A stretch of DNA of 64,000 nucleotides, from positions 124,001 through 188,000 of the IMG/VR virus record IMGVR_UViG_3300028735_000003; one strand, given 5' to 3'. Position numbers and translations under genes: made by a program. Shown piece after piece: positions 477-14,892 of this stretch. Position 1 is the stretch's first letter. Each line of letters begins with the position of its first letter. A model generated the notes under the pieces. It ran no database searches, was not told the origin of the DNA, and saw only the letters and a list, made by a program, of their open reading frames with translations.

Positions 477-1463
477 TTACTCATATTTTACAAGTATATA
501 TGCATCATAGCATATTAATTCGTTTAAGGAAAATATGGATACATTATAGTGAGCTGCTATAGCATTTCTTATGCTACCATTATTGTTTCCTACTGATAAT
601 TTTTCGCTGATATAACGAATTGGTTTTGTATCTTTTACGATAATATTTCCAGTAACAATTACTTCATTATTAGTTTCATCATATAATTGTATGGTTATCT
701 TTTCGCCAATATTATTAGATTTAATATCAATTACAAAAAATAATGTACGTGTTAGTCCAGATATTATAGTAGGATAATCTGCCATATCAATACTAGTGCC
801 GCCAACAACTCCATGGGTAACAGGCGTCATAGAGCTAACTATTGGTACTCGAACTGGTAAAATAGCGCCTGGTAATCCCTGAATACCAGGTGGTCCCTGA
901 AGACCTTGGTCTCCTTTTGGTCCTTGTATTCCTTGTGGACCTGCCGGTCCAACTGGACCCGTAGGACCAGGAATACCTTGTAGACCTTGAATTCCCTGAA
1001 CTCCCTGAACTCCTTGATCACCTTTTGGTCCTTGAGGTCCTCTAATTCCTTGAATACCGGCGGGACCCGTATCGCCTTTAGGACCTTGTGGACCTGTATC
1101 ACCTTTAGGACCAGTTGGTCCAATAGGTCCCATTGGTCCCGTTGGACCAATATCACCAGTATCACCTTTCGCGCCTATTTTACCTTCTGGTCCCTGTAAT
1201 CCTTGCGGACCTGTTGGTCCTGTATCACCAGTGTCTCCCCTTTCTCCAGTCATACCCTGTGGTCCTGTTGGACCTGGACTTCCAGAAATAGTAGCCACAG
1301 AATCGCCATCATAAAACATCCAACCAGATTTAACATTGTATCGTAAAGATGCTGTTTTACCATCTGCGCATTGGAAAACAATCTCTTTATCTGAATCGGT
1401 TCCATCACCAATGTATAATGTATTTCCAGGTATTGAATTTATCGGGCTGCTTAGTTTTGGCAT
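477..1463 (-). CDS. Collagen-like (Gly-X-Y) fibre/decoration protein; paralogue of 4877..5602
   Basis: Long uninterrupted G-X-Y tract (GPTGPQG...). Start moved to MPKLSS (ATG 1463) because the longer ORF overlaps the upstream gene and this N-terminus aligns with MAKIVS of 4877..5602. Confidence 0.8.
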
Positions 1464-1477
1464 GATTATCTCTTTAC

Positions 1478-1798
1478 TTAAATTGCCCAGGTTGCTATGA
1501 CTCTTATTGTAGGTTGAACTAATGTCCCAGGACCAGAATAATGTGCTCCAGTGAAATCTGGAGAACCAGTTACTGTCCAACCAACGTTATTTGTTCCATT
1601 ATAACCCACCATATGATAATATCTGACTTGTGTTGTTCCTGATCCTGCACCAACAGAGCAATAAACTGATGCCAATTTAGCATTTGGTAATGATGACTTA
1701 ACTGGGTCTTTAAACTCATGTTTTCCATCATATCTTACATCAGGTGCTGAAGAAGATACCGCAACATATGGAAGAGCTTCACCACTTAAATCAGCCAT
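1478..1798 (-). CDS. Small putative virion protein (106 aa)
   Basis: ATG at 1798 overlaps the upstream stop (TAATG coupling). Its C-terminal half resembles the N-terminus of 5616..8402. Confidence 0.65.
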
Positions 1799-2805
1799 TA
1801 GAAACCCACCAATGGTATTGTGCCAGGAACACTTGGAGTTCCATTCCAAGGAAAAATAAAATCATCGCATTGCCAAAATTGTCTTGTTGAATCATCTGGG
1901 TATGTTGTATCCACATATGATCCTAAATTAGCTGCAGATATATCTCCAAACCACAAATCATATATTTGCCCATGACGACCCTTAGCTCCGGTAGTTTCCG
2001 ACACGAGAGATATTGGATAAATATCATATTCATTGCTTATTTGATTTATAGAGCTAAAATTCTCTAATGTGGTTGCAGAGCCAAATCCCTCAGTGGCTAG
2101 ATACAATTTTGATGTTACAGAATTCATATAAGAAGTAAGAATTGCATTGTCATTATATATATCTAATCTACATTGAGTACTTAAATTACCGATACTACTA
2201 CCGGTTCTAAAAGCGACAATAAATGGATTTGTCCATCCACTTACTGGATTTTTTGGTTTGTCAAATAACCAAAATAAACCTGGGATACGTTGAGTTAGAT
2301 ATACTATCCTAGTACATTCTCCATCAGTACTCTGCATAATTTGCAACATAATATTGTCAGCAACGTTAGGATACCAATAGTCATTATTATTATCCAATAC
2401 AATCTGTGTCGTAGCAGTAGGTCTATTTAATGTTGAGCCGCCGGTAAATCCGCTAAGTCCGATTACAAATCCAATATATCTTGTACTGTATGAATATCCA
2501 AAATCTATACAAATCTCAAAATTGGAAAATATTCCAGTTTGTTTTAGAACTATCCAAGAATGTGCAACAGAACCTGCTGTTCCCCACTGAATATCATCTA
2601 TGGTATTCCACCTATCAACACCATCCATTCCTGCAGTGGTCTTGTTTGATGAGCCAGTAACAACCCATGGATTAGATTCAAAAGTTGTTAAGGCATTTTT
2701 AAGAGCCAAAATCATTTTTTTTGTATTAGTATGTTCATCACCAGTAGATGGTATCATTATATTTGGTTTAAATTGCCACGTTTTTTCAATTGTTGGTAAT
2801 GCCAT
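1798..2805 (-). CDS. Putative virion/fibre-associated protein, paralogue 3 of a tandem triplet
   Basis: Shares MALPT..KTW.F, NPW.V.GSS, AHSWIVL.Q, DGECTR, FWLFDKPKNPVSGW.NP, GRHG..YD and PWN with the two neighbouring genes. Confidence 0.7.
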   Translation of the reverse strand: MALPTIEKTWQFKPNIMIPSTGDEHTNTKKMILALKNALTTFESNPWVVTGSSNKTTAGMDGVDRWNTIDDIQWGTAGSVAHSWIVLKQTGIFSNFEICIDFGYSYSTRYIGFVIGLSGFTGGSTLNRPTATTQIVLDNNNDYWYPNVADNIMLQIMQSTDGECTRIVYLTQRIPGLFWLFDKPKNPVSGWTNPFIVAFRTGSSIGNLSTQCRLDIYNDNAILTSYMNSVTSKLYLATEGFGSATTLENFSSINQISNEYDIYPISLVSETTGAKGRHGQIYDLWFGDISAANLGSYVDTTYPDDSTRQFWQCDDFIFPWNGTPSVPGTIPLVGF

Positions 2806-2815
2806 TATATGTTCC

Positions 2816-3850
2816 TCATACGCTTCTATAAAAATCTGTTTTGTTCCATGGTAAGACTATGTTAGAAAAACACATAAATTCTCTGGCGCCAACTGCCGGA
2901 AAAGAATCTCCAGAATATAATACGCTGGATGTAAAATACATATCATAAATTTCACCATGTCTACCGTAACACCCAGGAGTTGTAGATGCCAAACCTATAG
3001 GGGTTAATGGCCATTCACCAGTTAATTGATTAGCGTATATTTGATTCTCTCCAATTGTTGCTGAGATATAAGCTTCTGTTGTCGCATATAGATACATGGT
3101 TGATGAATTAGCTACACCAATTATGGTGGCGTTATCATTTAATTGAGAATATGTAGCAGCAGTAGAGCCATTCAGTGCGTTGTATAAAAATATACATGGA
3201 TTAGACCATCCAGATACAGGATTTTTTGGTTTATCAAAAAGCCAAAATACTTTTGGAGTTAGTGCACTAAACGCAAATACTCTAGTACATTCTCCATCTG
3301 TACTCATCATACAACTTACATTATAACTAACAGGGACGTAACCGTTAATAAACAAATAATTATTTGGGAAACAGGTAATAACATCGGTTCCTGTCGGTGT
3401 TTGTGTAGTTACTGGTGAAGACAAATCAAATCCATTCAGTGGAGATACATATCCACAATTATAATAGGGGGAGGAATTTGGTTGTTTTAAAGAAATACAC
3501 ATTTCAAATTTAGTATTTATCTTTGGTTGTCTAAGGACGATCCAAGAGTGAGCGCTTCCACTAGGAGCCCAAACCAAATCATATATTGTTTTCCAATTAT
3601 CATTTGTATTTGCTACTAATGTTCCAGTATCAGATGTGGCTCCGTTTCTGCCAGACGATCCGCTAACAGTCCAAGGATTACTATTAATAACAGAATATCC
3701 ATCTTTGTCTTTCCATCCTGTAGGGTCAGTCAACATATTTTTTACAGTTAAATGGAAATTTCGCATATCTTCTTTATTGTCGTTATTACGAGTAAAATAT
3801 ACATTATTTGTCTTAAATATCCATGTTTTATCTAATGTAGGAATAGCCAT
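2816..3850 (-). CDS. Putative virion/fibre-associated protein, paralogue 2 of a tandem triplet
   Basis: Same conserved blocks as 1798..2805 and 3860..4867; AAGG RBS. Confidence 0.7.
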   Translation of the reverse strand: MAIPTLDKTWIFKTNNVYFTRNNDNKEDMRNFHLTVKNMLTDPTGWKDKDGYSVINSNPWTVSGSSGRNGATSDTGTLVANTNDNWKTIYDLVWAPSGSAHSWIVLRQPKINTKFEMCISLKQPNSSPYYNCGYVSPLNGFDLSSPVTTQTPTGTDVITCFPNNYLFINGYVPVSYNVSCMMSTDGECTRVFAFSALTPKVFWLFDKPKNPVSGWSNPCIFLYNALNGSTAATYSQLNDNATIIGVANSSTMYLYATTEAYISATIGENQIYANQLTGEWPLTPIGLASTTPGCYGRHGEIYDMYFTSSVLYSGDSFPAVGAREFMCFSNIVLPWNKTDFYRSV

Positions 3851-3859
3851 ATTATACCT

Positions 3860-4867
3860 TTAAGTAGTAACTGGTGTTGATTGATTCCATGGTAAGATTA
3901 TATCTCCAGCCTGTACGAATTGTTTTAAAGTTCCGCTTGAAGGATATGTATCCCCATTGGCAGGAGTAGTTGAGCCGAACCAAATATCAGATAATTTACC
4001 ATGACGACCATAAAATCCAGTAGTCATAGATGCTAGCCCAATCGAAGTAAATGGCCAAGCATTCGACAACGAATTAACTGTTGTTTGTCTTTCACCAACA
4101 GTCGCTGACACATAAAAAGACGTTGTATAATAACAGTTGGCGTTGCCAGTTTTACCGAACAAATTAGTAGCTTTTATGTATCCTCTTGCCGCATCATTTA
4201 ATACATCATATGTTGGCTCTAATGTAGAACACATAGTATTTATTGCTGGATTCGTCCATCCGGTTACTGTCTCTTTTGGTCTATCAAACTGCCAAAAACA
4301 TTTGATAACATTAGCCACGTATATCCATAATCTATTACAATACCCATCATCACTTATTTCTATATTTAAAACAGAACTAAATGGTGGCGTATTATTAGTT
4401 AACCACCCAGCGGATGCCAAATGTACCACTTCATCTGTAGCAGTTGGTCTTGTTAATGTTGATGGCGATGAAACATCAAATCCTGCGCCCAAAGAAGATA
4501 TTAGGCTTAATCTGTAACCAGAGCTATCTATTATATTTAAGTCTATACAAAGTTCAATATTCATGTCATTTATTTTGCTTTGTCTCAATACAATCCATGA
4601 ATGAGCTCCGCTATTCCAAACTAAATTTGTAATATTAGACCAATTATCAGCCGAATTAGCAGTAATAGAATTACTTGACGCGACAACTATCCAAGGATTA
4701 GATAATGTAGTTATTGCTCCAGACGAATCTGTCCAACCAGTACCAGAAGTCAATGCATTTTTTATGCCTAATAGAAGAGTACGATTATCTGTTAAAGCAA
4801 CACCTGATGTAGCATATGCTTGATTTACTTTAAATCTCCATGTATGTTCCAGTGAAGGTAATGCCAT
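3860..4867 (-). CDS. Putative virion/fibre-associated protein, paralogue 1 of a tandem triplet
   Basis: Same conserved blocks; GAGGA RBS. Confidence 0.7.
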   Translation of the reverse strand: MALPSLEHTWRFKVNQAYATSGVALTDNRTLLLGIKNALTSGTGWTDSSGAITTLSNPWIVVASSNSITANSADNWSNITNLVWNSGAHSWIVLRQSKINDMNIELCIDLNIIDSSGYRLSLISSLGAGFDVSSPSTLTRPTATDEVVHLASAGWLTNNTPPFSSVLNIEISDDGYCNRLWIYVANVIKCFWQFDRPKETVTGWTNPAINTMCSTLEPTYDVLNDAARGYIKATNLFGKTGNANCYYTTSFYVSATVGERQTTVNSLSNAWPFTSIGLASMTTGFYGRHGKLSDIWFGSTTPANGDTYPSSGTLKQFVQAGDIILPWNQSTPVTT

Positions 4868-4876: not shown

Positions 4877-5602
4877 TTAGTACGAATATTCTATTGTAGC
4901 ATGTCTACATATAGCTACATTTGGACTTACCGACCCGACCAGACTTAATTGAACCTCATAATCTTTCATAGAGTTAGGAAAACCTCTTGTTGTTCCAGGA
5001 ATTAAAATAGCAGTTACAGTAGTTGGTACATGATTATTTGTAAATAAATTAGTTCCACTTACTTCTATATCATCAGTTGTATTATATAATCTAATGTAAG
5101 CATACCCATCAGTAGCTAATATATCAGCAATAAATAACCATGAACTAGCATCTGTAACTGATGGATCTAATCTTCTAATAGATCCCAATGTAGTATAACC
5201 ATTAGACGTACTAAAAACTCCTGCCAGACATGGGTATTCCCCTCGTAATAATCCGCCAGCAGTGCCAGTAGGACCAGTAGGTCCAGTTATGCCTGTCGGT
5301 CCTTGAGGTCCAGTGGGACCAGGATCGCCTTGAATACCCTGTATTCCTTGAATGCCCTGTACACCTTGTGGACCAGTTGGTCCAGTTGGTCCAGTTGGTC
5401 CAGTTGGTCCAGTTTGTCCAGCAGCAAAACTATGATATGCATATCCATCTGAATATTGCCAGCCGCCACCAATGTCAAACTTTAATGCAGCAATGTACCC
5501 ATCTGGTCTAATTGCTTCTATACGTTTTTCGGTGCCAGTGTCGTCTCCAATACGGATAACATTTTCATCTAATACATTGATGCCACTGACTATTTTAGCC
5601 AT
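4877..5602 (-). CDS. Collagen-like fibre/decoration protein (GPT-rich), 3 DGY motifs
   Basis: Central GPTGPT/GIQ collagen tract flanked by globular domains paralogous to 477..1463. Confidence 0.8.
5373..5408. repeat. 9-bp tandem repeat (ccagttggt x4) encoding the Gly-Pro-Thr collagen repeat
   Basis: Read directly from the sequence. Confidence 0.85.
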
Positions 5603-5615
5603 AGTGTTTACTCAC

Positions 5616-8402
5616 TTATATCTCTAGAGTTACAAATAAATTCTCAACTGCACAGGTGGCACTTGTCTCACATCTTATTGTAATCCAATCTCCTTCCACA
5701 ACGCTGAATGAATCTACTAAATTCTTAGCAACGTATCCAACTATACCAGCAGGCATAGAACTATCAAGTGTCAGTGTTAATGCTGTATCTATCTTATTTT
5801 TTCTTACAGTTATAATAACAGTTTCACCAGAAGATGGGGGTGTTGAACAAGTTACAATTAATCTACTTACCGTTGCAGTAGGTGCATTGACAACATATGC
5901 AGGGAAGTTCTCACTTCCAGCACCAGTTTCAATAGCCATACTTACAATGTACCCGTCTAGAGGCGGAGAACTTGTCAATGCTCCATATGCGCCAACAGTA
6001 ATTGCTGTAGAGCCCGCGCTTATAGAGTGAGTATGTAAAGCATCTGCATTGCTTCCATTACATAATTTACTTATATTTAGACCTGTCACTTGCTCTGCTA
6101 CATGATATCCATCAATTGCGAAATTTTCTGTTATTGTAGATGACCCACCAGGTAAATCTATATAAGCACCAGTTTTAGAATTAGCTTTCAAATATGCTTG
6201 TGGTCCCATTAGATTTATGAACAAATTCATATTGGACCCATCAAGATATATGTGGTCTGTTTGTGCATTGGAATTGAATATTACATCTGAATTACCTAAT
6301 ATCGTACCAGCATCAATATGAACTTCATATCCATCTAAATTAAGAGATGTTGCTGAAGTAACGTTTACTTCATAGCCATCTAGATTAGTAACAAAATCTG
6401 TGCTACCAATTAATAACTCGTCTGATGTATTAGTTGACCATACTGGAATATCTATATTATTTAAACTATTTCTGGCTGCCGATCCCAATGTATTGTTAGG
6501 AACTCTAAGTGCTCCAGATTGAGCGGCAATATATGTACCTGTTGCCGATGGCGTGACTACTACTGTAGATGCCATCATTGGCAAGTTAGAAAGCAAGGTT
6601 AAATCATCACCATTTTGCACACTAGCAAACTTCCAATATCCATCAGATTCGCTCCAAATTATTGCAGAGTGGTCTCTATCGGTGATTCCGTCAGCGCTGC
6701 CTCTCTGAATTGATATACCAGTAATCAATGTTGGTATTGGGGCAATACCAGTGGTATAATTTAAGTGAATTACTCTGTCTGCGATATCTACAACTGTGCT
6801 ATCAATAGATGTTGTGGTACCTACAACCTCAAGATTTCCCATAATAATCGTATTATTTGTGGCGGAGCCAATGACTACACGATTATATCCATCAGATCCA
6901 ATCAAATATATGTCATCAGAATTAGTGGTGTTTCTAGCCATAATAGCTGCAACACCATTTGGAACACGTATCATACCATCTTGGGATGGATTTGTACCAA
7001 TGTTAAAATAAGGTCCATACCCATCTATTCCAATATTAGCTCTATTAATACCTCCTAATTCAAATTGAATAAATCCAGGCTGTGTTCCACTGTTGCCGTT
7101 ACCAGAGCTTAGAACCAACCCTCCACCTTGAAATGCTCCAGAAGTATCCTGTGCTCTTACTGTTAAATTTTGTGTAACACCATTAGTAGAATCTTGTAAT
7201 ATAATTGGAGATGTTAATGCATCGTCAAATCTAAATGATTTTGCATTTAACCAAATACTATCATTATCAGTTGGATAAATTGCATTATTTGAGAATATAG
7301 TTAATTTGGTTTGGTTTGCAGTCTTAAAAGATATATCTCCATTACGACTACCAGAACCAGATTGAAGAATTAATTTTCCACCATAACCAGAAACGTCTGT
7401 TGTATTTTGTGCCTGAATCGTTAATATCTGCCCATTACCAACTGTTGTTGTAGTTTGATAAATAATCGGAGTATTTGCATCTATTGAAAATCTGGCAAAC
7501 GAATCTCCCAATTCTACAAATGACACGCCATTAACAAGAAAACTATGATAATATGTTGCAGCAACACTATTAAGTATGCCTTTATTTATAGAGTCACCAA
7601 TATATATAGTATCGCCAATGCTTTTAATCAAATTAAGATTATTACCAAGTGTGTCTATAGAATAGATTGAATCGCCATTTTGCAATCTAATAGTTCCAGT
7701 AGTTGGGACATTGCTAAGTCCATGCGTTATATGGTCGCCAACCAGTAGTTCTTGTGTAACATAAACAGGATTTGTTATTGAACCAAGTTTTACCCTATTC
7801 GATCCATCTATCTGTACAATATCTACGTCTGCAGTATTAGATGCATTTCTTCCTCTAATAACAGAATCATTTGGATTATAATTAGGAATACGTATTATCC
7901 CTGATTGTGCAGGATCTGTGCCAACTGCCAAATATCCATCGATAGATAACGATCCTGTAAATACAGGAATAGATGCGCCAACAGTAGTTCCATCGCCAGA
8001 TGTATTGTAAGCAAACTTCCATCCAGATAATGTTTCATCCCAGAATAGACAAGCGTGATCTCTAGGAATTAAACTAGAAGTATATCCTCTAACAGCCGCC
8101 AAACCAGTGATTTGTGGTGGTGGTGGAACTGTATCTAAATAAGGGGCAGTTGGAGGATGAATCCAATCATAACTGTTTATATGAAAGAAGTATCCATCTG
8201 TTGAGTTAGTAGGTTTTAAGAAATTCTCTACTGCTGATTGAACTATTCTATTTACAGTTATATTTACAAAATTAGCAGAATTATAAATAGGTGGGGCATA
8301 CTTTGCTATTGAATCGGGTTGATCATTAACAATCCAATCAACATATCCAACGGCTCCTGGTGCCGCTGTATTGTAGGCTCTCATATAATATTGTATTGGC
8401 AT
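5616..8402 (-). CDS. Long tail-fibre-like virion protein with internal repeats, 9 DGY motifs
   Basis: 928 aa, rich in G/S/T/N/I and beta-type. Internal repeats such as ITG...RG...RDH...W...WKF and SG.IR.PN...RN..N..D. Lies in the fibre cluster. Confidence 0.7.
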   Translation of the reverse strand: MPIQYYMRAYNTAAPGAVGYVDWIVNDQPDSIAKYAPPIYNSANFVNITVNRIVQSAVENFLKPTNSTDGYFFHINSYDWIHPPTAPYLDTVPPPPQITGLAAVRGYTSSLIPRDHACLFWDETLSGWKFAYNTSGDGTTVGASIPVFTGSLSIDGYLAVGTDPAQSGIIRIPNYNPNDSVIRGRNASNTADVDIVQIDGSNRVKLGSITNPVYVTQELLVGDHITHGLSNVPTTGTIRLQNGDSIYSIDTLGNNLNLIKSIGDTIYIGDSINKGILNSVAATYYHSFLVNGVSFVELGDSFARFSIDANTPIIYQTTTTVGNGQILTIQAQNTTDVSGYGGKLILQSGSGSRNGDISFKTANQTKLTIFSNNAIYPTDNDSIWLNAKSFRFDDALTSPIILQDSTNGVTQNLTVRAQDTSGAFQGGGLVLSSGNGNSGTQPGFIQFELGGINRANIGIDGYGPYFNIGTNPSQDGMIRVPNGVAAIMARNTTNSDDIYLIGSDGYNRVVIGSATNNTIIMGNLEVVGTTTSIDSTVVDIADRVIHLNYTTGIAPIPTLITGISIQRGSADGITDRDHSAIIWSESDGYWKFASVQNGDDLTLLSNLPMMASTVVVTPSATGTYIAAQSGALRVPNNTLGSAARNSLNNIDIPVWSTNTSDELLIGSTDFVTNLDGYEVNVTSATSLNLDGYEVHIDAGTILGNSDVIFNSNAQTDHIYLDGSNMNLFINLMGPQAYLKANSKTGAYIDLPGGSSTITENFAIDGYHVAEQVTGLNISKLCNGSNADALHTHSISAGSTAITVGAYGALTSSPPLDGYIVSMAIETGAGSENFPAYVVNAPTATVSRLIVTCSTPPSSGETVIITVRKNKIDTALTLTLDSSMPAGIVGYVAKNLVDSFSVVEGDWITIRCETSATCAVENLFVTLEI

Positions 8403-8414
8403 CGTTTCCCCTAA

Positions 8415-10268
8415 TTATGCTCTTGATAATTCTCTCCACTCAACAGTAGCAAATGCTCTTCTGTCATCAGCGCCTATTGTAGCTGTATCAACTCGTACTA
8501 TTAGTTCATTAGTAGATGTTGTTATTGTTGTGGTCCAGCCAGTGCCATTATCTGTAGCTAGTGTAGACTTTATTTCATCCAAAACTAAAGTTCCAGATTC
8601 TTGATGAGCTAATATATCATAAATAAATCTTGCGCACGTAGGCGTTCCGCTTGTATTTACAACAAGGATTCTAACACACATTTCATAGGCTTTACCATTT
8701 TCAGTTGTTATATTTGCTGACGTACCTGGGATGGTTAAATCAAATTGACCACCGTTGATTTGATATCCATCTAATAAAATTCTAGAAAATTGCGCATCTC
8801 CAACTGATGCCCAGTAATTTAATGCATAAGTTTGTTGCCCAGAAATTCTCGATTTGGCAGCATAACCACATGCTGAAGCATATGTTGCGGATACTGTATT
8901 TCCATATCCATCAGCTATTCCGAACTCTCCATTAATAGTATTTGAATTTCCAAATACATGGGAATTATCAGCAGTGACTATATTATTCGACCCTATAACG
9001 GAAGAATTCTTAGAAGTTACGTTATTACTAGAACCTAACAAGATAACACTATCAGCCCCGCTTACTGTATTTTGTGTACCAGTTATAACAACTGAATATT
9101 CACCACTTACTATGTTTCCAGCACCAGTGATAATTGTAGAAGAACCAGATGTGGCTTGATTTAATACACCATTAATAACTGTAGAAAGACTACCCGAAGC
9201 AGTATTATTTGATCCGTTTAATATAGCAGACAAATAGCCATCGGCGGAATTGTGTATTCCATTATTAATAGATCCTAAATGTCCTGTAACAGAGTTAGAT
9301 AAACCTCCAATAATGGATGCATAATAGCCATCAGCTATATTATTCGACCCGCCAAATATAGACGAATACGGCTTAGTTATAGAATTATAGCTTCCCCCCA
9401 ATATGGAGGCAAATTCTTCAGAAATCGAGTTTTCTAATCCCCCGCCAATTATAGAATAATCAGCCGTAATTGTGTTTCTATATCCGCCAACTGATGTAGA
9501 ATAGTTTCCTGATACACCAATACTCAAATTACTACTTGCTAAATTGACAATACCAATCTTTGTATTATCAATTACCGACTGACTAACGGGTCTATTAGCA
9601 ACTATATTTTGTGATTCATAAAGAGGGTTGAAGACGATAGGTAATCTTGTTGGAACCCAAGATGATGACTGCCATATTAATGCGTAACCATCAGATGGTG
9701 TAATGGCAGATACGGGGCGTCCTTGAATACCTATTACTGTTTGATCTGTTTTTGTTCCTGAAAGATCTCTATATGCACTAAAACCAACTTGTGGCTCCCA
9801 ATATCCGTCAATGTTATTCCATGTAAGATGATATCCGTCAAGCGGCATTGTTGATACCAATGGTCTGTCTTGCAACCCTATTACAGTCTGGCTGTAATAT
9901 CCTCCAGACAAATCTCCACCAGCCGACCAAAAATCAGTTGGAATCAATTGCCAAAGATTATTTCTGCGTTGGTACAGTCCCTCATAGACATAACCGTCTC
10001 TTCTAAGGTACAGAGAACCGTTAAGCCTATTTTCTGTTGGATATCCATCACCAACACTAATAGAAACACCGCCATATCCATCTATATAAAATGGATTAGT
10101 AACATTTGGTGCAGGTGCATGTGGGTTGTTTATTCTCGCTTCTAGAATATCTAATCTAACACGAAGATCTGCATAAACTCCAAATGGAGCTATGCCCAAC
10201 ACTCTTTCTATTGTTTGCACCGCATTAATTAGATTATTAATAGCGATTGTTTTATCGTCAATAACCAT
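8415..10268 (-). CDS. Tail fibre/adhesin with beta-helix (YadA-head-like) repeats, 10 DGY motifs
   Basis: Two DLSG....QTVIG.Q.RP.....P.DGY...W repeats, followed by many ~14-aa S.I.GG..N repeats. Confidence 0.7.
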   Translation of the reverse strand: MVIDDKTIAINNLINAVQTIERVLGIAPFGVYADLRVRLDILEARINNPHAPAPNVTNPFYIDGYGGVSISVGDGYPTENRLNGSLYLRRDGYVYEGLYQRRNNLWQLIPTDFWSAGGDLSGGYYSQTVIGLQDRPLVSTMPLDGYHLTWNNIDGYWEPQVGFSAYRDLSGTKTDQTVIGIQGRPVSAITPSDGYALIWQSSSWVPTRLPIVFNPLYESQNIVANRPVSQSVIDNTKIGIVNLASSNLSIGVSGNYSTSVGGYRNTITADYSIIGGGLENSISEEFASILGGSYNSITKPYSSIFGGSNNIADGYYASIIGGLSNSVTGHLGSINNGIHNSADGYLSAILNGSNNTASGSLSTVINGVLNQATSGSSTIITGAGNIVSGEYSVVITGTQNTVSGADSVILLGSSNNVTSKNSSVIGSNNIVTADNSHVFGNSNTINGEFGIADGYGNTVSATYASACGYAAKSRISGQQTYALNYWASVGDAQFSRILLDGYQINGGQFDLTIPGTSANITTENGKAYEMCVRILVVNTSGTPTCARFIYDILAHQESGTLVLDEIKSTLATDNGTGWTTTITTSTNELIVRVDTATIGADDRRAFATVEWRELSRA

Positions 10269-10363
10269 TGATTACCGTTCCATACTGGATTTTACGCTAC
10301 ATCCCAATATATGCGTAAAGTTTAGTATACCACGGCGATTCAATTAATAATATAGACTATAAA

Positions 10364-10936
10364 TTATGAGGGGAAAATTATTAAATTCATTGATATTGGG
10401 ATTACATTAGCAACCCAATGTGTTTCTATAGAACTGCTACCACTTACCTGCACAGACAATACATTGGAAGAATATACTACTTGATAATAATATGAATTAT
10501 GCAAATATGGCGGCACGATATTAACCGATTCAATATTATATAGTAAACCTGAGATAGTTCTTAATACAATACGATCATACCAACATGATGTATGACCAAA
10601 AATATCAGTTGACATTATATGTACTAGAAGCGAACCATAAACATTATCCCCCCAAGGTATAGATATTATATTTGTATAGCCGTCATCATACGTGATGACA
10701 GAACCAAAATAACCATCAGATGGTCCAGTTGGTCCAGTAGCTCCAGTTGGTCCAGTAGCTCCAGTTGGTCCAGTAGCTCCAGTTGGTCCAGTAGCTCCAG
10801 TTGGTCCAGTAGCTCCAGTTGGTCCAGTAGCTCCAGTTGGTCCAGTAGCTCCAGTTGCACCACTAGGCACACTAGAATCAATAACGTATTTTAGTCCATC
10901 CCATTTTAGATATCCTGGATTTGGCAATGATGTCAT
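10364..10936 (-). CDS. Short collagen-like protein with (GATGPT)7, 2 DGY motifs
   Basis: G-X-T tract. Start moved to MTSLP (ATG 10936), which is preceded by a GAGGA RBS. Confidence 0.75.
10729..10854. repeat. Perfect 18-bp tandem repeat x7 (ttggtccagtagctccag) encoding the GATGPT collagen repeat
   Basis: Seven identical units counted directly. Confidence 0.95.
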
Positions 10937-11133
10937 ATCGTCCTCATAGCGGCGCCATATACGATATGATATCAAAAAAATAGTATGATCACAGGTCAGA
11001 TATCAATTTTTTAAATTCATCACTGGATAATTCTACAGCGTTAGTAATTTTTTTTAATGGGTTTTCATGATCTTTAGCTTGAATAATTATTAATACCTTA
11101 CCGCCATCTGTCTTTCTTGCTTCTATAAATGAT

Positions 11134-11955
11134 TTATCTGAAAATTGAATTTTCATAAAAAGCGCTCCTATCTGTTATCACCTCAACATGATCTTCATGG
11201 ATATAAACTGAATGTTCAGCATGAGCACAAATTCCATCTGCTTGAACCGTCCAACCATCATATAAAATTCTAGTGCCAGTAGTTCCTTGAACAAGCATAG
11301 GCTCAATTGCTATAACCAGTCCAGGTTGAATTCTTATTCCAATTTCTGGTTCAGATTTATTATCAACAAATGGAGCGGCATGGAGAGTATTCCAAGATAA
11401 ACCATGACCACCATATTTCGTTATCACAGAAAAACCATTACCTTTAGCTGATTTATATATGGCGTTACCAATAACTCCAAGATGTTTATTTACAGATATT
11501 GCGCTTATGCCTTTGTTTAGAGCCTCATATGTTGACTCAATTAATTTAGTATGCCAAGCATATTTTGGCTTTCCATAAATGCAGGTAATAGCAGTATCAG
11601 CAATAGCCCCCTCATATGTAACACCAATATCAAATGTAACCAAATCACCATCTTGCAAATGATAATCGGAAGGAATACCGTGTACTAATTGATTATTTAC
11701 AGAAGTACAAACGGCTGACGGAAATCCTTTGTATCCTTTGAATGTTGGAATGCATCCATTATCCACAACAATCTTTTCAGCAAGATTATCTAATTCTATT
11801 AGAGATAGGTTGGTTTTGTTTTTAACTTCCTGTTCTAAAATAACCAAAGCCTTAGCGGCTATCTTTCCAGCATATCTTTGTTTTTCTAGCCACTCATTAT
11901 TTTGTAATGGAAAAAAGCCGTTCTTATCGAACAGCTCTCGTGTTATAACTCTCAT
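11134..11955 (-). CDS. map: Methionine aminopeptidase type I
   Basis: GYKGFPSAVCTSVNNQLVHGIP, metal ligands in DIG...AD, GHG..LH, IAIEPM, DGWTV and AHAEHSV motifs. Confidence 0.95.
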   Translation of the reverse strand: MRVITRELFDKNGFFPLQNNEWLEKQRYAGKIAAKALVILEQEVKNKTNLSLIELDNLAEKIVVDNGCIPTFKGYKGFPSAVCTSVNNQLVHGIPSDYHLQDGDLVTFDIGVTYEGAIADTAITCIYGKPKYAWHTKLIESTYEALNKGISAISVNKHLGVIGNAIYKSAKGNGFSVITKYGGHGLSWNTLHAAPFVDNKSEPEIGIRIQPGLVIAIEPMLVQGTTGTRILYDGWTVQADGICAHAEHSVYIHEDHVEVITDRSAFYENSIFR

Positions 11956-11975
11956 ATTACTTGACCTTCGAGCAA

Positions 11976-12227
11976 TTACTTTATCAAACCGGATTTAATA
12001 TTTGTAATTTTGGCAGCTTCTTTAATAGCATCTTTGACACTTGAGTAATCTATATAATCTTTGAAAGCAGGTGTCTGTAACAATGCTACTATCTTTTTAT
12101 CTAACATTAACAGCGTATTATTCATTTCTGTAACGGTAGCTCTATCAAGAGTAGGATTGCCCATAGTATTAGATAAATATTGTCTTATCTGGATTAGATT
12201 GGTTATTTCAGTTAAATCCACTTTCAT
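11976..12227 (-). CDS. Hypothetical protein
   Basis: ORF tightly packed between its neighbours; start moved to MKVDL (12227), just after the upstream stop. Confidence 0.6.
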   Translation of the reverse strand: MKVDLTEITNLIQIRQYLSNTMGNPTLDRATVTEMNNTLLMLDKKIVALLQTPAFKDYIDYSSVKDAIKEAAKITNIKSGLIK

Positions 12228-12228
12228 C

Positions 12229-12498
12229 TCACTTTTGCTGATGCTGTTGTGCTCCGCCACGTATGATTGCACCATTTTCATCTATTGCATCGGCTTCTGT
12301 TAAACCATATTTCATATATAGTTGCAAAACTACATATTTATATGACAATTCTGCGGTCTCATTTTGAGCTAAAGCCTTTTCTGCTTGGGCTAGAGCTACT
12401 AATCTTTTAGATTTCGCCAGCTCTAACGCCATCCTATCAACATCCTGCAACTTATCAACTGATTGTGTGGCTTGTATGTCTTTCATTTCTTCAACCAT
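12229..12498 (-). CDS. Hypothetical helical/coiled-coil protein
   Basis: 89-aa ORF with an AGGAG RBS. Confidence 0.65.
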   Translation of the reverse strand: MVEEMKDIQATQSVDKLQDVDRMALELAKSKRLVALAQAEKALAQNETAELSYKYVVLQLYMKYGLTEADAIDENGAIIRGGAQQHQQK

Positions 12499-12507
12499 AG
12501 TAACTCC

Positions 12508-14892
12508 TTACAAAATTTCTGAAGCTAATGTAGCTAACTTGCTACGTTCTCCTTGTGTAAATGTAATATGTCCAGCCAGATCGGATCCTTTAAATTTTTC
12601 AATTACATAAGTTAATCCATTACTGGTCGCATCCAACATAGAATTATCAATTTGCTCTATATCGCCAGTAAGAATAATTTTTGAGTTTTCACCAGCCCTT
12701 GTAAGAACGGTTTTCACATCTTCTTTAGAAAGATTCTGACAGTTATGAGCAATTAATCCGCCCATAGTATTTCGAGATGAAGAACATACTATAAAATTAT
12801 GATTATCTTCTACCTCTAAATCATATACAATTTCTTTCTCTGATAGTATATCTATACTATCTACTATTGTTAACCCATAATTATTAAATTTATTAGACCA
12901 AATATAACTACCTATTTCTGGATTGTTAGCACTATCATATATTTTATGATGTAAATCAGTATGTACATATGGAGAAATTATCTCGCATAATTTCAAATAA
13001 CCATTTTTATTCATATAAATTGAATAATATCCTGATTTCTTGTATTTCATAGGTGAGAATTTATAATTACAATCTATACCCATTGATTGTAATTTTTGTA
13101 CCATTCTTTTTTGAGAATCTTCGTTAAAGGAACATGTAGATATAGTAGCATTAACATTGTTTTGTACGCTACCACTGTCCATAAACCAAATAGCTAATCC
13201 TCGTGCGTCTAATCTATCTAAAATCCACTGGGGGCAAGTTGTTTTATTTTTAGGAAACTCATTAGGTAGAGCGAACATTTCACTAGAGAATTTAATATAT
13301 GGTTTTTTAGAATATCCATTATTAATGATTTCGTTCGTGTTTGAATTAAACATGAACGCTTTCCATTTACAATATTCCTCTTGTTGTTTCCCGTGAACTA
13401 CTCGCAATCTATATCTGTTAAGTCCATGATTTGATATATTCCCGTCACCAAGAAATGATCCTAATATTATTTGTAATTGATCATTATTAACTGATTTTAA
13501 TAAGTGATGACCATCAGGTGATGTGGTTTTGATTAAATCACCCCTTTGTAATTTATTGGCTTCAACCCAACCATTTTCTGTTAAAAACTTATGATTTTCT
13601 GTACATTTAATTTTTCTATTACCACATGTTATTTGAAGTAAATCCCTTTCACCTCTATTCCATGCATTAATTATCTTTTTATATTCAAATTGATTGGTGT
13701 GTTCATTATATGATTTAACAAGAGGCAATTCTTTTTTATTGTTCCACATATCATAAAGAGTACCAATACGTTTTTTACCAGAGTTAGTTTCTATATTTTG
13801 TTCGTAGGGGAAACATTCATCTAATAGAATGATGGCATTAGGAATGCTTCTACCACGAATGTAAGTAATAGCCTCCATTTCAATTCTGCCCCTTTTTACA
13901 TACATTTCTAATTCTCGACGCCAGTCGCCGCCATTTTTACTAGTAAAAAGTGTTTCAAAGTTATCCATAATAGCTTGAAACCAGGGCGCAAGTTTTTCTT
14001 CCATAGTTCCTGGTAAAAATCCGATATCATTACCAACAGATTGAATTGGTCTGTATATGATAAGCCTATCGTACTCTTTTCTATTAATTACTAGTTCTAG
14101 GGCAGTAGCTAATACAACTAAGCTCTTACCAGTTCCAGCTCTGCCAATTAGTGTTACCAAATCAATATTCTTATCCATAATCATATCAATGGCACACAAT
14201 TGTTCCTTGTTTCTAGCAGAAAGATGCCAAGGATAAATCTTTTTAATTATCTCTAATTTATTCGGAGATGTTTGTCTGGCTAGAGCTATATCGTTTCCCG
14301 AAGAATCTTCGAAATAAGCGCACTCATTTGGATTAAGTTCTATACCATATAGAGCGGGGTTAATAATACCTTTCTTTTGTAAATCCAATGCTGCGTCATC
14401 ATTCTTAATTGTTTGGATTCCAGCATATAGATCACTTAAAGAACACCTAGGTACTTCGTGTGCTATAGCATTTATTCCTCTAGATTTAGCTTTTATTCTT
14501 AGATTAATATCATTGCTTACAAGTATAACTTCTTTATCTGGATTATTATTATGTATTACAAATGTTGATACAAGAATTTGAGTATCAGGATAATAAGGGT
14601 CTCCAAAACCTTTATATTTATCTTCCATTAAATCATAATATGTGGCATCTACTTTAAGTAGAATGTCGTCGTCTAATAAGACGCCCTTGCTAATATCTCC
14701 AAGTTCAGTAATTTTGTCAAGTAATCTGCAGCATACTCTTGAGTTCTTTCCGACCTCACCGACCGATACTTTCTTTTTATCTAGTTCGTTAATAACTGTG
14801 ATAGGAATAATTACATCACTATTTTTGAAATATTTATAAGCTGCAGGGTCATCAATTAAAACAGAGGTATCTAGTATGTGTATTTTTCTCAT
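12508..14892 (-). CDS. phoH: PIN-domain PhoH-family ATPase (PhoH2/YlaK-like) with an intein
   Basis: N-terminal PIN (ILDTSVLI...LVSNDINLRIKA), Walker A GRAGTGKS, GFLPG, YIRGRS, Walker B ILLDE|intein|CQN, TRAGE, GDIEQID. Confidence 0.92.
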   Translation of the reverse strand: MRKIHILDTSVLIDDPAAYKYFKNSDVIIPITVINELDKKKVSVGEVGKNSRVCCRLLDKITELGDISKGVLLDDDILLKVDATYYDLMEDKYKGFGDPYYPDTQILVSTFVIHNNNPDKEVILVSNDINLRIKAKSRGINAIAHEVPRCSLSDLYAGIQTIKNDDAALDLQKKGIINPALYGIELNPNECAYFEDSSGNDIALARQTSPNKLEIIKKIYPWHLSARNKEQLCAIDMIMDKNIDLVTLIGRAGTGKSLVVLATALELVINRKEYDRLIIYRPIQSVGNDIGFLPGTMEEKLAPWFQAIMDNFETLFTSKNGGDWRRELEMYVKRGRIEMEAITYIRGRSIPNAIILLDECFPYEQNIETNSGKKRIGTLYDMWNNKKELPLVKSYNEHTNQFEYKKIINAWNRGERDLLQITCGNRKIKCTENHKFLTENGWVEANKLQRGDLIKTTSPDGHHLLKSVNNDQLQIILGSFLGDGNISNHGLNRYRLRVVHGKQQEEYCKWKAFMFNSNTNEIINNGYSKKPYIKFSSEMFALPNEFPKNKTTCPQWILDRLDARGLAIWFMDSGSVQNNVNATISTCSFNEDSQKRMVQKLQSMGIDCNYKFSPMKYKKSGYYSIYMNKNGYLKLCEIISPYVHTDLHHKIYDSANNPEIGSYIWSNKFNNYGLTIVDSIDILSEKEIVYDLEVEDNHNFIVCSSSRNTMGGLIAHNCQNLSKEDVKTVLTRAGENSKIILTGDIEQIDNSMLDATSNGLTYVIEKFKGSDLAGHITFTQGERSKLATLASEIL
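12742..13815 (-). mobile_element. Intein (358 aa) with LAGLIDADG domain in PhoH
   Basis: Starts CFPY after Walker B DE; block B CTENHKF; ends VYDLEVEDNHNF...IAHN|C; endonuclease motifs LGSFLGDG and AIWFMDSG. Confidence 0.92.

What the first reader, a model, noticed from the sequence alone, without database searches (positions are those of the whole stretch)
4877..10936. A dispersed Asp-Gly-Tyr (DGY) tag marks virion proteins only: candidate sequon or docking code for an undescribed virion-decoration system
Seen (manual counts): DGY occurs 3x in 4877..5602, 9x in 5616..8402, 10x in 8415..10268 and 2x in 10364..10936. That is 24 of the 30 DG dipeptides in about 1,980 aa, including 10 of 10 in the 617-aa fibre. 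It also occurs 1x in 2816..3850, 1x in 3860..4867, 5x in 37977..42020, 6x in 42066..49229, 1x in 49229..53326 and 3x in 55520..57748, about 41 in total. It occurs 0 times among roughly 34 DG dipeptides in about 7,900 aa of non-structural proteins (11134..37084). Composition alone predicts around one per several thousand residues. The codons vary (GAT-GGG-TAC 5495, GAT-GGA-TAT 5441, GAC-GGG-TAC 5949, GAT-GGC-TAT 6372, GAT-GGT-TAC 9684, GAC-GGT-TAT 9990), so selection acts on the peptide. Flanking residues are mostly unrelated, so this is not a repeat domain. Inference: DGY is a recognition tag on exposed turns, either a sequon for Tyr modification (O-glycosylation by the phage GTs; Tyr O-glycans are established on some Bacillota S-layers) or a docking site for a decoration protein or chaperone. 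I know of no described DGY sequon in phages.
Basis: partly seen in the sequence, partly recalled or inferred. Interest (0 to 1): 0.95.

Follow-up and report, generated by a model that had tools for sequence, protein, structure and literature searches.

The report
Asp-Gly-Tyr motif on phage tails
In a clade of uncultured giant phages, outward-facing tail proteins carry the tripeptide Asp-Gly-Tyr about 20 times more often than expected, which points to an undescribed surface recognition code (perhaps a glycosylation site) whose function is still unproven.

Summary
All counts and all six cited codon positions are exact. DGY is the most over-represented tripeptide in the window: 41 seen against 3.8 expected from composition and 9.7 from a first-order Markov model. 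It occurs only in frame on the coding strand. The same bias holds in 120 homologues of the fibre (1042 of 1383 DG followed by Y) and 53 homologues of the 928-aa protein (439 of 665). The baseline in diverse viral ORFs is 3.5%. All three residues are co-selected (NGY 18, EGY 1, DGF 9, DGW 0). D and Y are gained and lost together at glycine turns. Homologues lacking the motif have small polar residues at the Y position, which implies exposure. The motif is a clade-specific overlay: the same repeat modules in other phages, T4 fibres and some nested sublineages lack it. "Virion proteins only" needs refining. DGY marks fibres, baseplate periphery and sheath accessory domains, but not tube-region, tape-measure-like or gp25-like proteins. 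A GmaR/SunS-like protein glycosyltransferase ends the fibre operon, and a dTDP-sugar/GT cluster adjoins the baseplate genes. The sequon reading is therefore plausible but unproven. A self-contained structural turn staple is the main rival.

The parts
8415..10268 (-). 617-aa tail fibre with 10 DGY among 10 DG. It has an N-terminal region with three DGY, two DUF5907-type repeats ('..IGLQ.RP......P.DGY.L.W...DGYW.P'), a UspA1/LbR-type left-handed beta-roll and a C-terminal beta-sandwich.
   Evidence: counts and contexts; PF21300, E 9.7e-14; PDB 3pr7 UspA1, E 7e-17; AF2 model, pLDDT 78; fold matches to tail fibres and tailspikes.
5616..8402 (-). 928-aa tail protein of unknown fold with 9 DGY among 14 DG. 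Its family shows the same bias (439 of 665).
   Evidence: The AF2 model is poor.
4877..5602 (-). 241-aa collagen-like fibre protein with 3 DGY among 3 DG. Two of them lie just before the Gly-Pro-Thr triple-helix repeats.
10364..10975 (-). 203-aa collagen-like fibre protein with 2 DGY among 3 DG, directly after the collagen repeats.
1798..4867 (-). Three ORFs of 335-344 aa of unknown function inside the fibre cluster, with 0, 1 and 1 DGY.
   Evidence: no family match.
477..1580 (-). 367-aa collagen-like fibre protein with 0 DGY among 3 DG.
1..455 (-). First 151 codons of a 356-aa GT2 glycosyltransferase of the GmaR/SunS type. It is the last co-oriented gene of the fibre cluster and runs off the left edge of the window. 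It is the candidate reader of the motif.
   Evidence: translation, with an IDADD motif; PF00535, E 2e-10; NCBIfam SunS family, E 6.5e-13 for this phage's protein and 1.3e-16 for the relative's, below cut-off; PDB GmaR E 2.5e-12, SunS E 8e-12; conserved position in L261 and L268.
31997..37084 (-). Glycan gene cluster next to the baseplate/fibre module: an RmlB-like dTDP-glucose 4,6-dehydratase (31997-32968), a GT2 (32972-33802), an unknown 349-aa ORF (34016-35065), a second GT2 (35095-35799) and a GT4 (35948-37084). None contains DGY.
   Evidence: In one search, homologues of the first three were found in 11-14 of 14 relatives' loci.
37977..49229 (-). Two giant tail or baseplate-attached proteins of 1347 aa (5 DGY) and 2387 aa (6 DGY, all beyond residue 1150).
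49229..53326 (-). 1365-aa gp6-like baseplate wedge protein with 1 DGY at residue 889, outside the gp6-homology region. Orthologues total 47 DGY among 149 DG, all in the extension.
55520..57748 (-). 742-aa baseplate-region protein with 3 DGY. Orthologues total 55 among 168, at three conserved places.
53340..55520 (-). gp25-like baseplate protein (53340-53771) and a 559-aa protein (53841-55520). Both are inner virion proteins without DGY in the window. Their orthologues together have 1 DGY among 9 DG.
57769..64000 (-). A 118-aa protein, a 706-aa protein and the 3' 1229 codons of a 1666-aa tape-measure-like protein. All are DGY-free here. Orthologues have 0 of 1, 2 of 115 and 1 of 193.

Best explanation
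DGY is a lineage-specific surface motif. An Asp-Gly pair closes a tight turn, and the Tyr opens or precedes the next beta-strand. In a clade of uncultured jumbo myoviruses it has been installed again and again at pre-existing glycine turns of outward-facing tail parts: fibres, baseplate periphery, giant tail proteins and accessory domains of the sheath. Selection keeps it as a three-residue unit. The most likely function is a recognition element (sequon) read by a clade-encoded protein glycosyltransferase. Proposed mechanism: late in infection, the GmaR/SunS-like GT2 encoded at the end of the fibre operon binds DGY turns on fibre and baseplate proteins in the cytoplasm. It transfers a sugar to the Tyr hydroxyl, with the Asp two residues upstream acting as a specificity determinant and possibly as a general base. 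The dTDP-glucose-4,6-dehydratase/GT2/GT2/GT4 cluster supplies and extends a 6-deoxyhexose-containing glycan. The result is a glycan-coated tail surface that could give protection, masking or adhesion. Shown: the enrichment, strict co-selection of D, G and Y, turn location, polar replacements, clade specificity, secondary decay in sublineages, restriction to outward-facing proteins, and the presence and type of the GT genes. Inferred: that any modification occurs, that Tyr is the acceptor, and which enzyme reads the motif.
For: 1. Enrichment is about 20-fold over a 3.5% baseline in two unrelated protein families and in every clade member examined. 2. Residue specificity is typical of enzyme or partner recognition: DGY 1042 against NGY 18, EGY 1, DGF 9, DGW 0, DAY 11 and DSY 9, although N is twice as common as D and F is about as common as Y. 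3. DGY occupies 64 different columns in 44 aligned fibres. Only about six of these are well conserved. Where DGY is absent the site is mostly xGx (759), against DGx 57 and xGY 32. Orthologues at 53% identity differ by five gains and two losses. 4. In non-DGY homologues the Y position holds S, N, D, T, K or A. Only 16-18% of residues there are hydrophobic, against a 27% background. This implies an exposed, permissive position. 5. The motif is an overlay. The same 'GDLSGxYPNP..IQG' module in other phages has SGQ, NGQ, EGD or NGN at that place. T4 gp34-37 have 0 of 22, and two other jumbo phages have 1 of 79 and 2 of 83. 6. It behaves as a lineage trait. DGY-poor fibres form nested clusters (4 changes against 9.7 when labels are shuffled, 0 of 500 shuffles as low). 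A syntenic DGY-poor phage keeps only two N-terminal sites, so most sites are not needed for folding. 7. Only outward-facing proteins carry it. DGY/DG is 24/108 in the sheath (all outside the conserved core), 55/168 in the 742-aa protein and 47/149 in the gp6-like extension. It is 1/193 in the tape-measure-like protein, 2/115 in the 694-aa protein and 0 of about 150 in tube-region proteins. 8. A GT2 whose closest solved relatives are GmaR (which glycosylates flagellin) and SunS/ThuS-type enzymes (which glycosylate peptides) lies between two convergent fibre clusters. It keeps that place in relatives at 77% and 49% identity. GmaR's GT-plus-TPR architecture is documented in PMC9638930. 9. An RmlB-like/GT2/GT2/GT4 cluster adjoins the baseplate genes, and its first three genes are conserved in relatives.
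Against: There is no direct evidence of any modification. No known member of the GmaR/SunS group uses Tyr as acceptor, as far as I know. The GT scores far below the curated SunS-family cut-off (48-60 bits against 350), and its C-terminal TPR character rests on weak matches (E 0.055). GT homologues at 44% identity or less in other viruses sit in loci with background DGY, and the homologues at 49% or more all belong to the DGY clade, so the co-occurrence is not independent of phylogeny. One clade member (L266) has the GT beside DGY-poor large proteins. The DGY-dense cluster L257 shows no GT within its 15 kb. Depletion of DGY in non-target proteins, which is expected for a cytoplasmic enzyme reading a three-residue tag, is only at about the 1st to 8th percentile of tripeptides, and is not significant in this phage alone at 0 of 53. 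The phage GTs could serve DNA or host-surface modification instead. In DUF5907-type repeats the Tyr has the same strand parity as the conserved Leu and Trp (DGYvLtW), which could mean partial burial.
Confidence: 0.38

Rival explanations
1. DGY is a self-contained structural staple. D-G forms a type I' beta-turn, and the following Tyr hydrogen-bonds through its hydroxyl to the Asp carboxylate or the turn backbone, while its ring caps the sheet. This clade uses it as a modular way to stabilise beta-hairpins and beta-roll corners in fast-evolving fibrous domains. No partner is involved.
For: The motif is always at Gly turns. Y146, Y156 and Y195 start strands after the turn in the AF2 model, and D460 and D587 behave similarly in the weaker model. 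Strict Y-not-F and D-not-N requirements, and all-or-none gain and loss, are what a D-Y hydrogen-bonded pair would give. There is precedent: in tyrosine corners of Greek-key domains, Tyr is never replaced by Phe for purely structural reasons (my own knowledge). Two N-terminal sites are kept even in DGY-poor lineages. Y shares strand parity with the conserved L and W in DGYvLtW. Tail-fibre modules recombine, which could spread a local solution within a clade.
Against: A generally stabilising turn should not be confined to one clade, yet homologous modules elsewhere use xGQ or xGN, and T4 and other jumbo-phage fibres lack it. Whole sublineages dropped most sites and kept the fibre. Replacement residues at the Y position are small and polar, not hydrophobic or aromatic. 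Beta-rich inner virion proteins of the same phages have none, for example 0 of 45 DG despite 57 GY in the 284-aa protein family. The high rate of new sites between close orthologues suggests that the number of sites matters.
Confidence: 0.3
2. DGY is a direct adhesive micro-site. An exposed Tyr and Asp on a turn bind a repeated ligand on the host envelope or in the matrix, such as a sugar hydroxyl pair or a cation. Many weak sites along the fibres, baseplate and sheath surface give avidity, in the way Ig-like domains on other phages bind glycans.
For: The motif has an exposed, turn-located character. It is restricted to outward-facing tail parts. Site numbers are high and turn over. The lineage trait could track a host group. 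Asp plus an aromatic residue is the usual sugar-binding pair in lectins, and Tyr, Asp and Gly dominate minimalist binding surfaces (my own knowledge).
Against: Three contiguous residues in many different structural contexts are unlikely to form a defined binding pocket. Sheath accessory domains are an odd place for host adhesion. The near-absolute sequence invariance looks more like recognition by one macromolecule than like many independently tuned binding sites. No ligand or host is known.
Confidence: 0.14
3. DGY is a docking or quality-control mark for a phage protein, such as a decoration or cement protein or an assembly chaperone, which binds DGY turns during tail-fibre folding or on the finished tail.
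For: The specificity, exposure and clade-restriction arguments are the same as for the sequon reading. The fibre clusters contain several conserved ORFs of unknown function (1798-4867 here, and small ORFs in L257).
Against: No candidate partner has been identified. About 10 sites per chain in very different folds, including the sheath and the wedge, would need a very promiscuous binder. Known fibre chaperones act on C-terminal tips or whole domains rather than on dispersed tripeptides (my own knowledge).
Confidence: 0.1
4. The enrichment is an artefact of composition, of hidden repeats, or of a DNA-level signal.
For: Some sites lie in repeats. GATGGATAT makes up 20 of the 41 triplets against about 11 expected from codon usage.
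Against: The enrichment survives the first-order Markov null (P = 7e-14). 32 of 41 sites have unrelated flanks. The DNA motif never occurs out of frame or on the other strand, and 11 different codon combinations are used. The bias is present in hundreds of diverged homologues at many different columns.
Confidence: 0.01

Closest known systems
Multi-site cytoplasmic glycosylation of fibrous bacterial adhesins and filaments: HMW1 by HMW1C at N-x-S/T, AIDA-I/TibA by AAH/TibC, flagellin by GmaR
   Same: In both, a dedicated soluble glycosyltransferase encoded next to its substrate gene modifies many sites on a long beta-rich or filamentous surface protein before export or assembly. The GT found here is a sequence relative of GmaR (PDB E 2.5e-12), and the fibre contains a trimeric-autotransporter-type beta-roll.
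   Different: The acceptor in those systems is Asn, Ser or Thr, and a Tyr sequon is not known. The substrates here are phage tail proteins. Modification is not shown here.
Three-residue O-glycosylation motif of Bacteroidota, D-(S/T)-(A/I/L/V/M/T) (my own knowledge)
   Same: It is a minimal tripeptide that starts with Asp and is scattered over many unrelated surface proteins. It is read as a sequon irrespective of fold.
   Different: There the hydroxyl residue is at position 2 and modification takes place outside the cytoplasm. The DGY motif has Gly at position 2 and Tyr at position 3. The host of this phage is unknown.
Tyrosine O-glycosylation of Bacillota S-layer proteins (PMC2943079)
   Same: Glycans are linked through Tyr (beta-Gal or beta-Glc to Tyr), often through rhamnose-rich adaptors. 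The phage encodes an RmlB-like enzyme and GT2s that weakly resemble rhamnosyltransferases.
   Different: S-layer proteins carry two to four sites. They are modified by a membrane oligosaccharyltransferase during secretion, and the review gives no consensus. No DGY context is reported. Nothing links this phage to Bacillota.
Mycobacteriophage virion glycosylation (Freeman et al. 2023, as cited in PMC12619734)
   Same: Phage-encoded GTs decorate virion surface proteins with glycans.
   Different: The glycans there sit on the C-termini of capsid and tail-tube subunits. Here the candidate sites are dispersed DGY turns on fibres, baseplate and sheath accessory domains, and tube-region proteins lack the motif.
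Tyrosine corner and type I' Asp-Gly beta-turn (structural motifs; my own knowledge)
   Same: These combine a Gly-containing turn next to a Tyr at a strand end. The Tyr hydroxyl is indispensable for a hydrogen bond, so Phe is not tolerated.
   Different: Tyrosine corners have Tyr three to five residues after the bonded residue (L-x-P-G-x-Y), occur in all kingdoms and are fixed positions of a fold. DGY has Tyr directly after Gly, is clade-specific, moves between columns and replaces polar residues.

Membership tests
Protein glycosylation sequon system | A short linear motif enriched on target proteins irrespective of fold | tested here: met
Protein glycosylation sequon system | A cognate protein-directed glycosyltransferase encoded by the same genome | tested here: inconclusive
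   A GmaR/SunS-like GT2 lies in the fibre operon and further GTs lie elsewhere. The specificity of all of them is unknown.
Protein glycosylation sequon system | A covalent glycan on the motif residue | not testable with these tools
   This needs mass spectrometry of virions or of co-expressed proteins.
Protein glycosylation sequon system | The motif is avoided in accessible non-target proteins of the same compartment | tested here: inconclusive
   There is 1 DGY against about 11 expected in non-structural homologues, and 4 against about 16 in inner virion proteins. However, the tripeptide ranks are only the 1st and 8th percentile, and this phage alone has 0 of 53.
Protein glycosylation sequon system | Motif richness co-varies with presence of the enzyme across lineages | tested here: inconclusive
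   The association is confounded with phylogeny. The contigs of the DGY-poor lineage are too short to test.
GmaR/SunS-type GT2 protein or peptide glycosyltransferases (for the gene at window 1-455 and beyond) | An N-terminal GT-A domain with a DxD motif that is most similar to GmaR and SunS | tested here: met
   PF00535, E 2e-10. PDB GmaR E 2.5e-12, and SunS and its relatives E 8e-12 to 9e-11. An IDADD motif is present.
GmaR/SunS-type GT2 protein or peptide glycosyltransferases (for the gene at window 1-455 and beyond) | A helical TPR-like substrate-binding domain after the GT domain | tested here: inconclusive
   The alignment to SunS runs to about residue 210. There are only weak matches to designed TPR proteins (E 0.055 and 0.58), and no Pfam TPR hit.
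GmaR/SunS-type GT2 protein or peptide glycosyltransferases (for the gene at window 1-455 and beyond) | Reaches the curated family score (NCBIfam TIGR04195) | tested here: not met
   It scores 48-60 bits against a cut-off of 350. It is a relative of SunS, not an equivalog.
Trimeric-autotransporter-head / LbR left-handed beta-roll (fibre residues about 250-470) | Sequence match to PF21300 above the gathering score, and to a solved head domain | tested here: met
   PF21300 at 51.7 bits against a cut-off of 30. UspA1 3pr7, E 7e-17.
DUF5907 repeat (PF19264) for fibre residues about 117-210 | Match to the Pfam model | tested here: inconclusive
   The window fibre gives no PF19264 hit. Homologue P0106 does (E 1.5e-26), and its repeats share the '..IQ....V....P.DGYvLTW' pattern with the fibre.
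Tyrosine corner | Tyr three to five residues after the residue it bonds, with consensus L-x-P-G-x-Y, at a fixed position of a Greek-key fold | tested here: not met
   Tyr directly follows Gly. The sites move between columns and replace polar residues. The hydrogen bonding itself could not be tested, because the tools give no model coordinates.

The most novel reading that the evidence does not exclude
DGY is the first tyrosine-directed protein glycosylation sequon. A GmaR/SunS-like phage glycosyltransferase writes a glycan coat onto dozens of Asp-Gly-Tyr turns across the whole outer surface of the tail (fibres, baseplate and sheath) in a large clade of giant phages. The number of sites is tuned by selection, and the sites decay when the system is lost.
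Probability: 0.28. Interest if true: 0.9.

Novelty: new variant of a known kind. Interest (0 to 1): 0.78.

Why it matters
A three-residue motif that is 20-fold enriched, strictly co-selected, positionally mobile and confined to the outer tail surface of one widespread clade of giant phages implies that something specific reads those turns. I found no such motif described.

- a new acceptor chemistry (Tyr) for the GmaR/SunS group;
- a simple predictive sequon for phage glycoproteomics;
- a portable tag for glyco-engineering proteins;
- a new view of how giant phages shield or target their tails.

If the motif is instead a structural staple, it would be a compact, transferable design rule for stabilising beta-hairpins and beta-roll corners. 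Either way, the motif is a cheap sequence marker for tail-surface proteins in an uncultured clade where most structural genes have no annotation.

Tried and rejected
**DNA-level cause.** Rejected. The motif is frame- and strand-specific and uses 11 codon combinations.

**Composition or dipeptide bias.** Rejected by the Markov null.

**A single hidden repeat domain.** Rejected as the sole cause. Only 9 of 41 sites share flanks, and the repeat modules lack DGY in other phages.

**A general property of tail fibres.** Rejected. T4 gp34-37 have 0 of 22, LR756501 has 1 of 79 and Dickeya JA13 has 2 of 83. T4's 9 of 61 in its baseplate/head region are scattered single sites in unrelated proteins, including Seg endonucleases.

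**Trimer-only clasp.** Weakened, because the sheath and the wedge protein also carry the motif.

**Searches that gave nothing:**
- Cultured phages with the fibre or with P0106.
- Solved structures with P0106 or the 928-aa protein.
- GTDB genomes with the fibre profile.
- A DGY-repeat DNA pattern in GTDB genomes. This returned only chance hits plus one mis-binned phage contig.
- Literature on a DGY motif, DUF5907 or tyrosine glycosylation in phages.
- The primary papers on S-layer Tyr glycosylation sites, which are not held in the library.
- Host or organism labels for NCBI-held homologues.

**Other dead ends:**
- The moraphage paper (PMC12619734) could not be tied to this clade.
- The second AF2 model was too poor to use.
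- Model coordinates are not exposed, so solvent accessibility could not be computed.
- The co-occurrence test with the GT was uninformative because of phylogenetic confounding and short contigs.

Full report
**1. What the window is**

The window is part of IMG/VR contig IMGVR_UViG_3300028735_000003 (353,765 bp). Window coordinate x corresponds to contig coordinate x + 124,000. Almost all genes are on the minus strand.

Annotation shows a jumbo myovirus.
- Non-structural genes: a TubZ-like tubulin, ribonucleotide reductase and PhoH-PIN (all three with inteins), DnaB-like and UvsW-like helicases, a GH25 lysin, an M24 peptidase and a sigma-like factor.
- Baseplate genes: gp6-like and gp25-like proteins.
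- Fibre genes: collagen-like fibres.

No cultured phage is similar at the DNA or protein level.

**2.

Among all tripeptides, DGY is the strongest outlier. There are 41 occurrences against 3.8 expected from composition and 9.7 from a first-order Markov model (P = 7e-14). DGY ranks above the collagen GPT/PTG/TGP repeats.

In the fibre block (477-10975), 26 of 38 DG are followed by Y and 26 of 40 GY are preceded by D. In the 7,592 aa of 11134-37604, none of 34 DG is followed by Y.

The DNA pattern GAYGGNTAY occurs 41 times. All are on the coding strand in frame 0, and 11 codon combinations are used. The signal is therefore at the peptide level.

**3. It is a property of a whole clade**

- A relative at 52-67% protein identity (L003) has 10 of 13, 10 of 13, 7 of 7 and 4 of 6 DG followed by Y in its fibre-cluster proteins.
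- Across 120 homologues of the 617-aa fibre, 1042 of 1383 DG are followed by Y.
- Across 53 homologues of the 928-aa protein, 439 of 665 are.
- Another fibre cluster (L257) has 13 of 14, 14 of 20 and 19 of 21.
- The baseline in about 630,000 aa of ORFs from diverse viral contigs is 3.5%.

**4. Anatomy of the motif**

All three residues are co-selected. In the fibre family the counts are DGY 1042, NGY 18, EGY 1, SGY 23, DGF 9, DGW 0, DGH 22, DAY 11 and DSY 9. This is despite N being twice as frequent as D and F about as frequent as Y.

In an alignment of 44 fibres, DGY occupies 64 different columns. About six are well conserved and the rest are sporadic. Where the motif is absent, the site is mostly xGx (759 cases), against DGx (57) and xGY (32). 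So D and Y come and go together around a pre-existing glycine.

Two orthologues at 53% identity differ by five gains and two losses in alignable regions, for example PPIY/PDGY, DGT/DGY and ADAL/LDGY. Existing sites in the closer fibre pair are better conserved than the average residue, with 9 of 11 shared at 67% identity.

In the AF2 model of the fibre (mean pLDDT 78), seven of the ten sites lie in turns at strand boundaries. Y146, Y156 and Y195 are each the first residue of a strand after a D-G turn. The model of the 928-aa protein is too weak to use, apart from two similar hairpin sites.

At DGY columns, homologues that keep the Gly but lack the motif have S, N, D, T, K or A at the Y position. 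Only 16-18% of residues there are hydrophobic, against a 27% background, and 5-10% are F, W or H. This is the signature of an exposed, permissive turn position.

**5. Repeats: partly, but the motif is an overlay**

Some sites lie in recognisable modules.
- Two DUF5907-type repeats in the fibre ("..IGLQ.RP......P.DGY.L.W...DGYW.P") match the repeats of P0106, which hits PF19264.
- The fibre also has a left-handed beta-roll related to the UspA1 head (PF21300, E 9.7e-14; PDB 3pr7, E 7e-17). There the DGY tyrosine aligns to the variable residue next to the corner glycine, not to UspA1's conserved Tyr.

Within the window, only 9 of 41 sites have significantly related flanks.

The module itself does not require DGY. 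I scanned IMG/VR for the DGY-independent lead-in GDLSGxYPNP. In other phages the equivalent place reads SGQ, NGQ, EGD, NGN, NGS, AGD or DGD. Only one locus has DGY, and it comes from a metagenome that also yielded a clade member.

Other phages' fibre regions show no bias. T4 gp34-37 have 0 of 22, LR756501 has 1 of 79 and Dickeya JA13 has 2 of 83.

**6. Which proteins carry it**

I extended the contig upstream (L004, L218) and compared about 30-40 related phages. DGY/DG by orthologous group:

| Protein group | DGY / DG |
|---|---|
| Sheath | 24 / 108 |
| 742-aa baseplate-region protein | 55 / 168 |
| gp6-like wedge | 47 / 149 |
| 1666-aa tape-measure-like protein | 1 / 193 |
| 694-aa protein | 2 / 115 |
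| 787-aa protein | 0 / 29 |
| 284-aa protein (despite 57 GY) | 0 / 45 |
| Two tube-region proteins | 0 / 79 |
| gp25-like protein | 0 / 2 |

In the sheath, all DGY lie outside the conserved C-terminal core, which itself has a DGF. In the wedge protein they lie beyond the gp6-homology region. A 1969-aa protein upstream of the sheath has 5 of 13.

So the motif marks outward-facing tail parts, not virion proteins in general. Capsid genes were not reached.

**7. Is it avoided elsewhere?**

Homologues of the non-structural proteins in 14 relatives, together with the window's own, have 1 DGY among 312 DG, against about 11-13 expected. Inner virion proteins have 4 among 473, against about 16 expected.

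Orthologues are not independent, so I ranked DGY against all tripeptides in the same data. It falls at the 1st percentile (non-structural) and the 8th percentile (inner virion). This phage alone has 0 of 53 (P about 0.16). Avoidance is suggestive but not established.

**8. A lineage trait that can be lost**

On a tree of 103 fibres, DGY-poor proteins form a few tight clusters nested among DGY-rich ones. The tree needs 4 changes, against 9.7 for shuffled labels, and 0 of 500 shuffles were as low.

One such phage (L213) is syntenic with the window (M24 peptidase, then fibre, then collagen-like protein). Its fibre cluster has only 5 DGY among about 31 DG. Its fibre keeps just the two N-terminal sites, and its DUF5907-type repeats read ND..SW and DGTQW. 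Most sites are therefore dispensable for the fold, and richness appears to depend on something that differs between lineages.

**9. Candidate readers**

There are two sets of candidate enzymes.

- *Glycan cluster.* Adjoining the baseplate/fibre module is an RmlB-like dTDP-glucose 4,6-dehydratase (E 8e-100), a GT2, an unknown ORF, a second GT2 and a GT4, at 31997-37084. Homologues of the first three are present in 11-14 of 14 relatives' loci.
- *Fibre-operon GT.* The last co-oriented gene of the fibre cluster is a 356-aa GT2. Its first 151 codons are window 455-3 on the minus strand. It lies between two convergent clusters of DGY-rich collagen-like fibre genes. It keeps that position in relatives at 77% and 49% identity.

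The closest solved relatives of the fibre-operon GT are GmaR, the Listeria enzyme that transfers GlcNAc to flagellin and has a GT domain followed by TPRs (PDB 22ao, E 2.5e-12; PMC9638930), and the SunS/ThuS-type peptide glycosyltransferases (E 8e-12 to 9e-11). NCBIfam's best match is the SunS family, far below its cut-off. This is the subgroup of GT2 enzymes that act directly on proteins or peptides.

The co-occurrence test gave no independent support. Of 261 relatives in IMG/VR, those at 49% identity or more belong to this clade. Most sit beside DGY-rich genes, but L266 does not. Those at 44% or less sit in loci with background DGY.

**10. Interpretation**

The data show a clade-specific, exposed, turn-located tripeptide under selection as a unit. 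It has been installed repeatedly on outward-facing tail proteins and is lost in some sublineages.

The clade specificity, the mobility of sites, the polar replacements and the dispensability in DGY-poor lineages fit a recognition element read by a lineage-specific factor better than a universal structural device. The protein-type GT in the fibre operon makes Tyr O-glycosylation the most concrete mechanism (confidence 0.38).

A self-contained D-G turn with a hydroxyl-bonded Tyr explains the residue specificity and the all-or-none pattern equally well. It cannot be excluded without coordinates or experiments (0.30). Direct adhesion (0.14) and docking of a phage protein (0.10) are further possibilities. 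Artefact is essentially excluded (0.01).

**11. Comparison with known systems and novelty**

I found no description of a DGY motif. The nearest analogues are:
- multi-site cytoplasmic glycosylation of fibrous adhesins and flagellins;
- the Asp-initiated three-residue O-glycosylation motif of Bacteroidota;
- Tyr-linked S-layer glycans (PMC2943079);
- mycobacteriophage virion glycosylation.

DGY differs from each in acceptor residue, motif, compartment or target. I rate it a new variant of a known kind, with function unproven. Interest is 0.78, because the statistical signal is extreme, general across a large uncultured clade and directly testable.

Noticed in passing
window 12508-14892, 15302-18787, 23926-26454, 28932-31736: Four essential-type genes carry inteins or homing-endonuclease inserts: PhoH-PIN, ribonucleotide reductase, a UvsW-like helicase and a TubZ-like tubulin. 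The relative L258 has intein-free RNR (838 aa against 1161) and PhoH (436 aa against 794).
   Followed up: partly
window 26736-27530 (+) and 37134-37604 (-): IS605 OrfB/TnpB-like transposase fragments. The second lies exactly between the glycan gene cluster and the first giant tail protein gene.
   Followed up: no
window 37977-42020 (-), residues about 602-627: Dockerin type I repeats (PF00404, E 1e-8) inside the 1347-aa tail protein.
   Followed up: no
window 60221-64000 (-); L004:8690-13690: The 1229-aa ORF listed in the window is the 3' part of a 1666-aa ORF (tape-measure-like) that starts beyond the right edge.
   Followed up: yes
window 11134-11955 (-); L213:565-1365; L258:7987-8787: An M24-family metallopeptidase gene keeps its place immediately upstream of the fibre cluster in distant relatives. 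Its role is unknown. Processing of fibre proteins is one possibility.
   Followed up: no
all 41 DGY sites in the window: The codon triplet GATGGATAT accounts for 20 of the 41 sites, against about 11 expected from codon usage. GGA is used 24 of 41 times against 42% overall. This is a mild bias and is unexplained.
   Followed up: partly
L260:11072-16190 (-), just beyond the window's left edge: A second, convergent cluster of DGY-rich tail-fibre-like genes: 216 aa (1 of 1), 634 aa with weak beta-propeller matches (3 of 6), 414 aa collagen-like (4 of 5) and 342 aa (2 of 2).
   Followed up: partly
L258:12911-16467: In the relative, two fibre-cluster proteins carry Laminin_G_3 / concanavalin-like lectin domains that are absent from the window's cluster. 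This is an example of module exchange between these fibre clusters.
   Followed up: no
L179 (JBEKIG010000024.1, binned as a Nitrososphaeria archaeon MAG): A 25-kb contig with a DGY-rich DUF5907-repeat protein (P0117, 7 of 10). It is probably a phage contig mis-binned into an archaeal MAG.
   Followed up: no
L052 (phage T4), SegD and SegE: The T4 GIY-YIG homing endonucleases share an 'NDGY.GSG' stretch. This is an unrelated, catalytic-domain use of DGY and explains part of T4's slightly raised DGY count.
   Followed up: no
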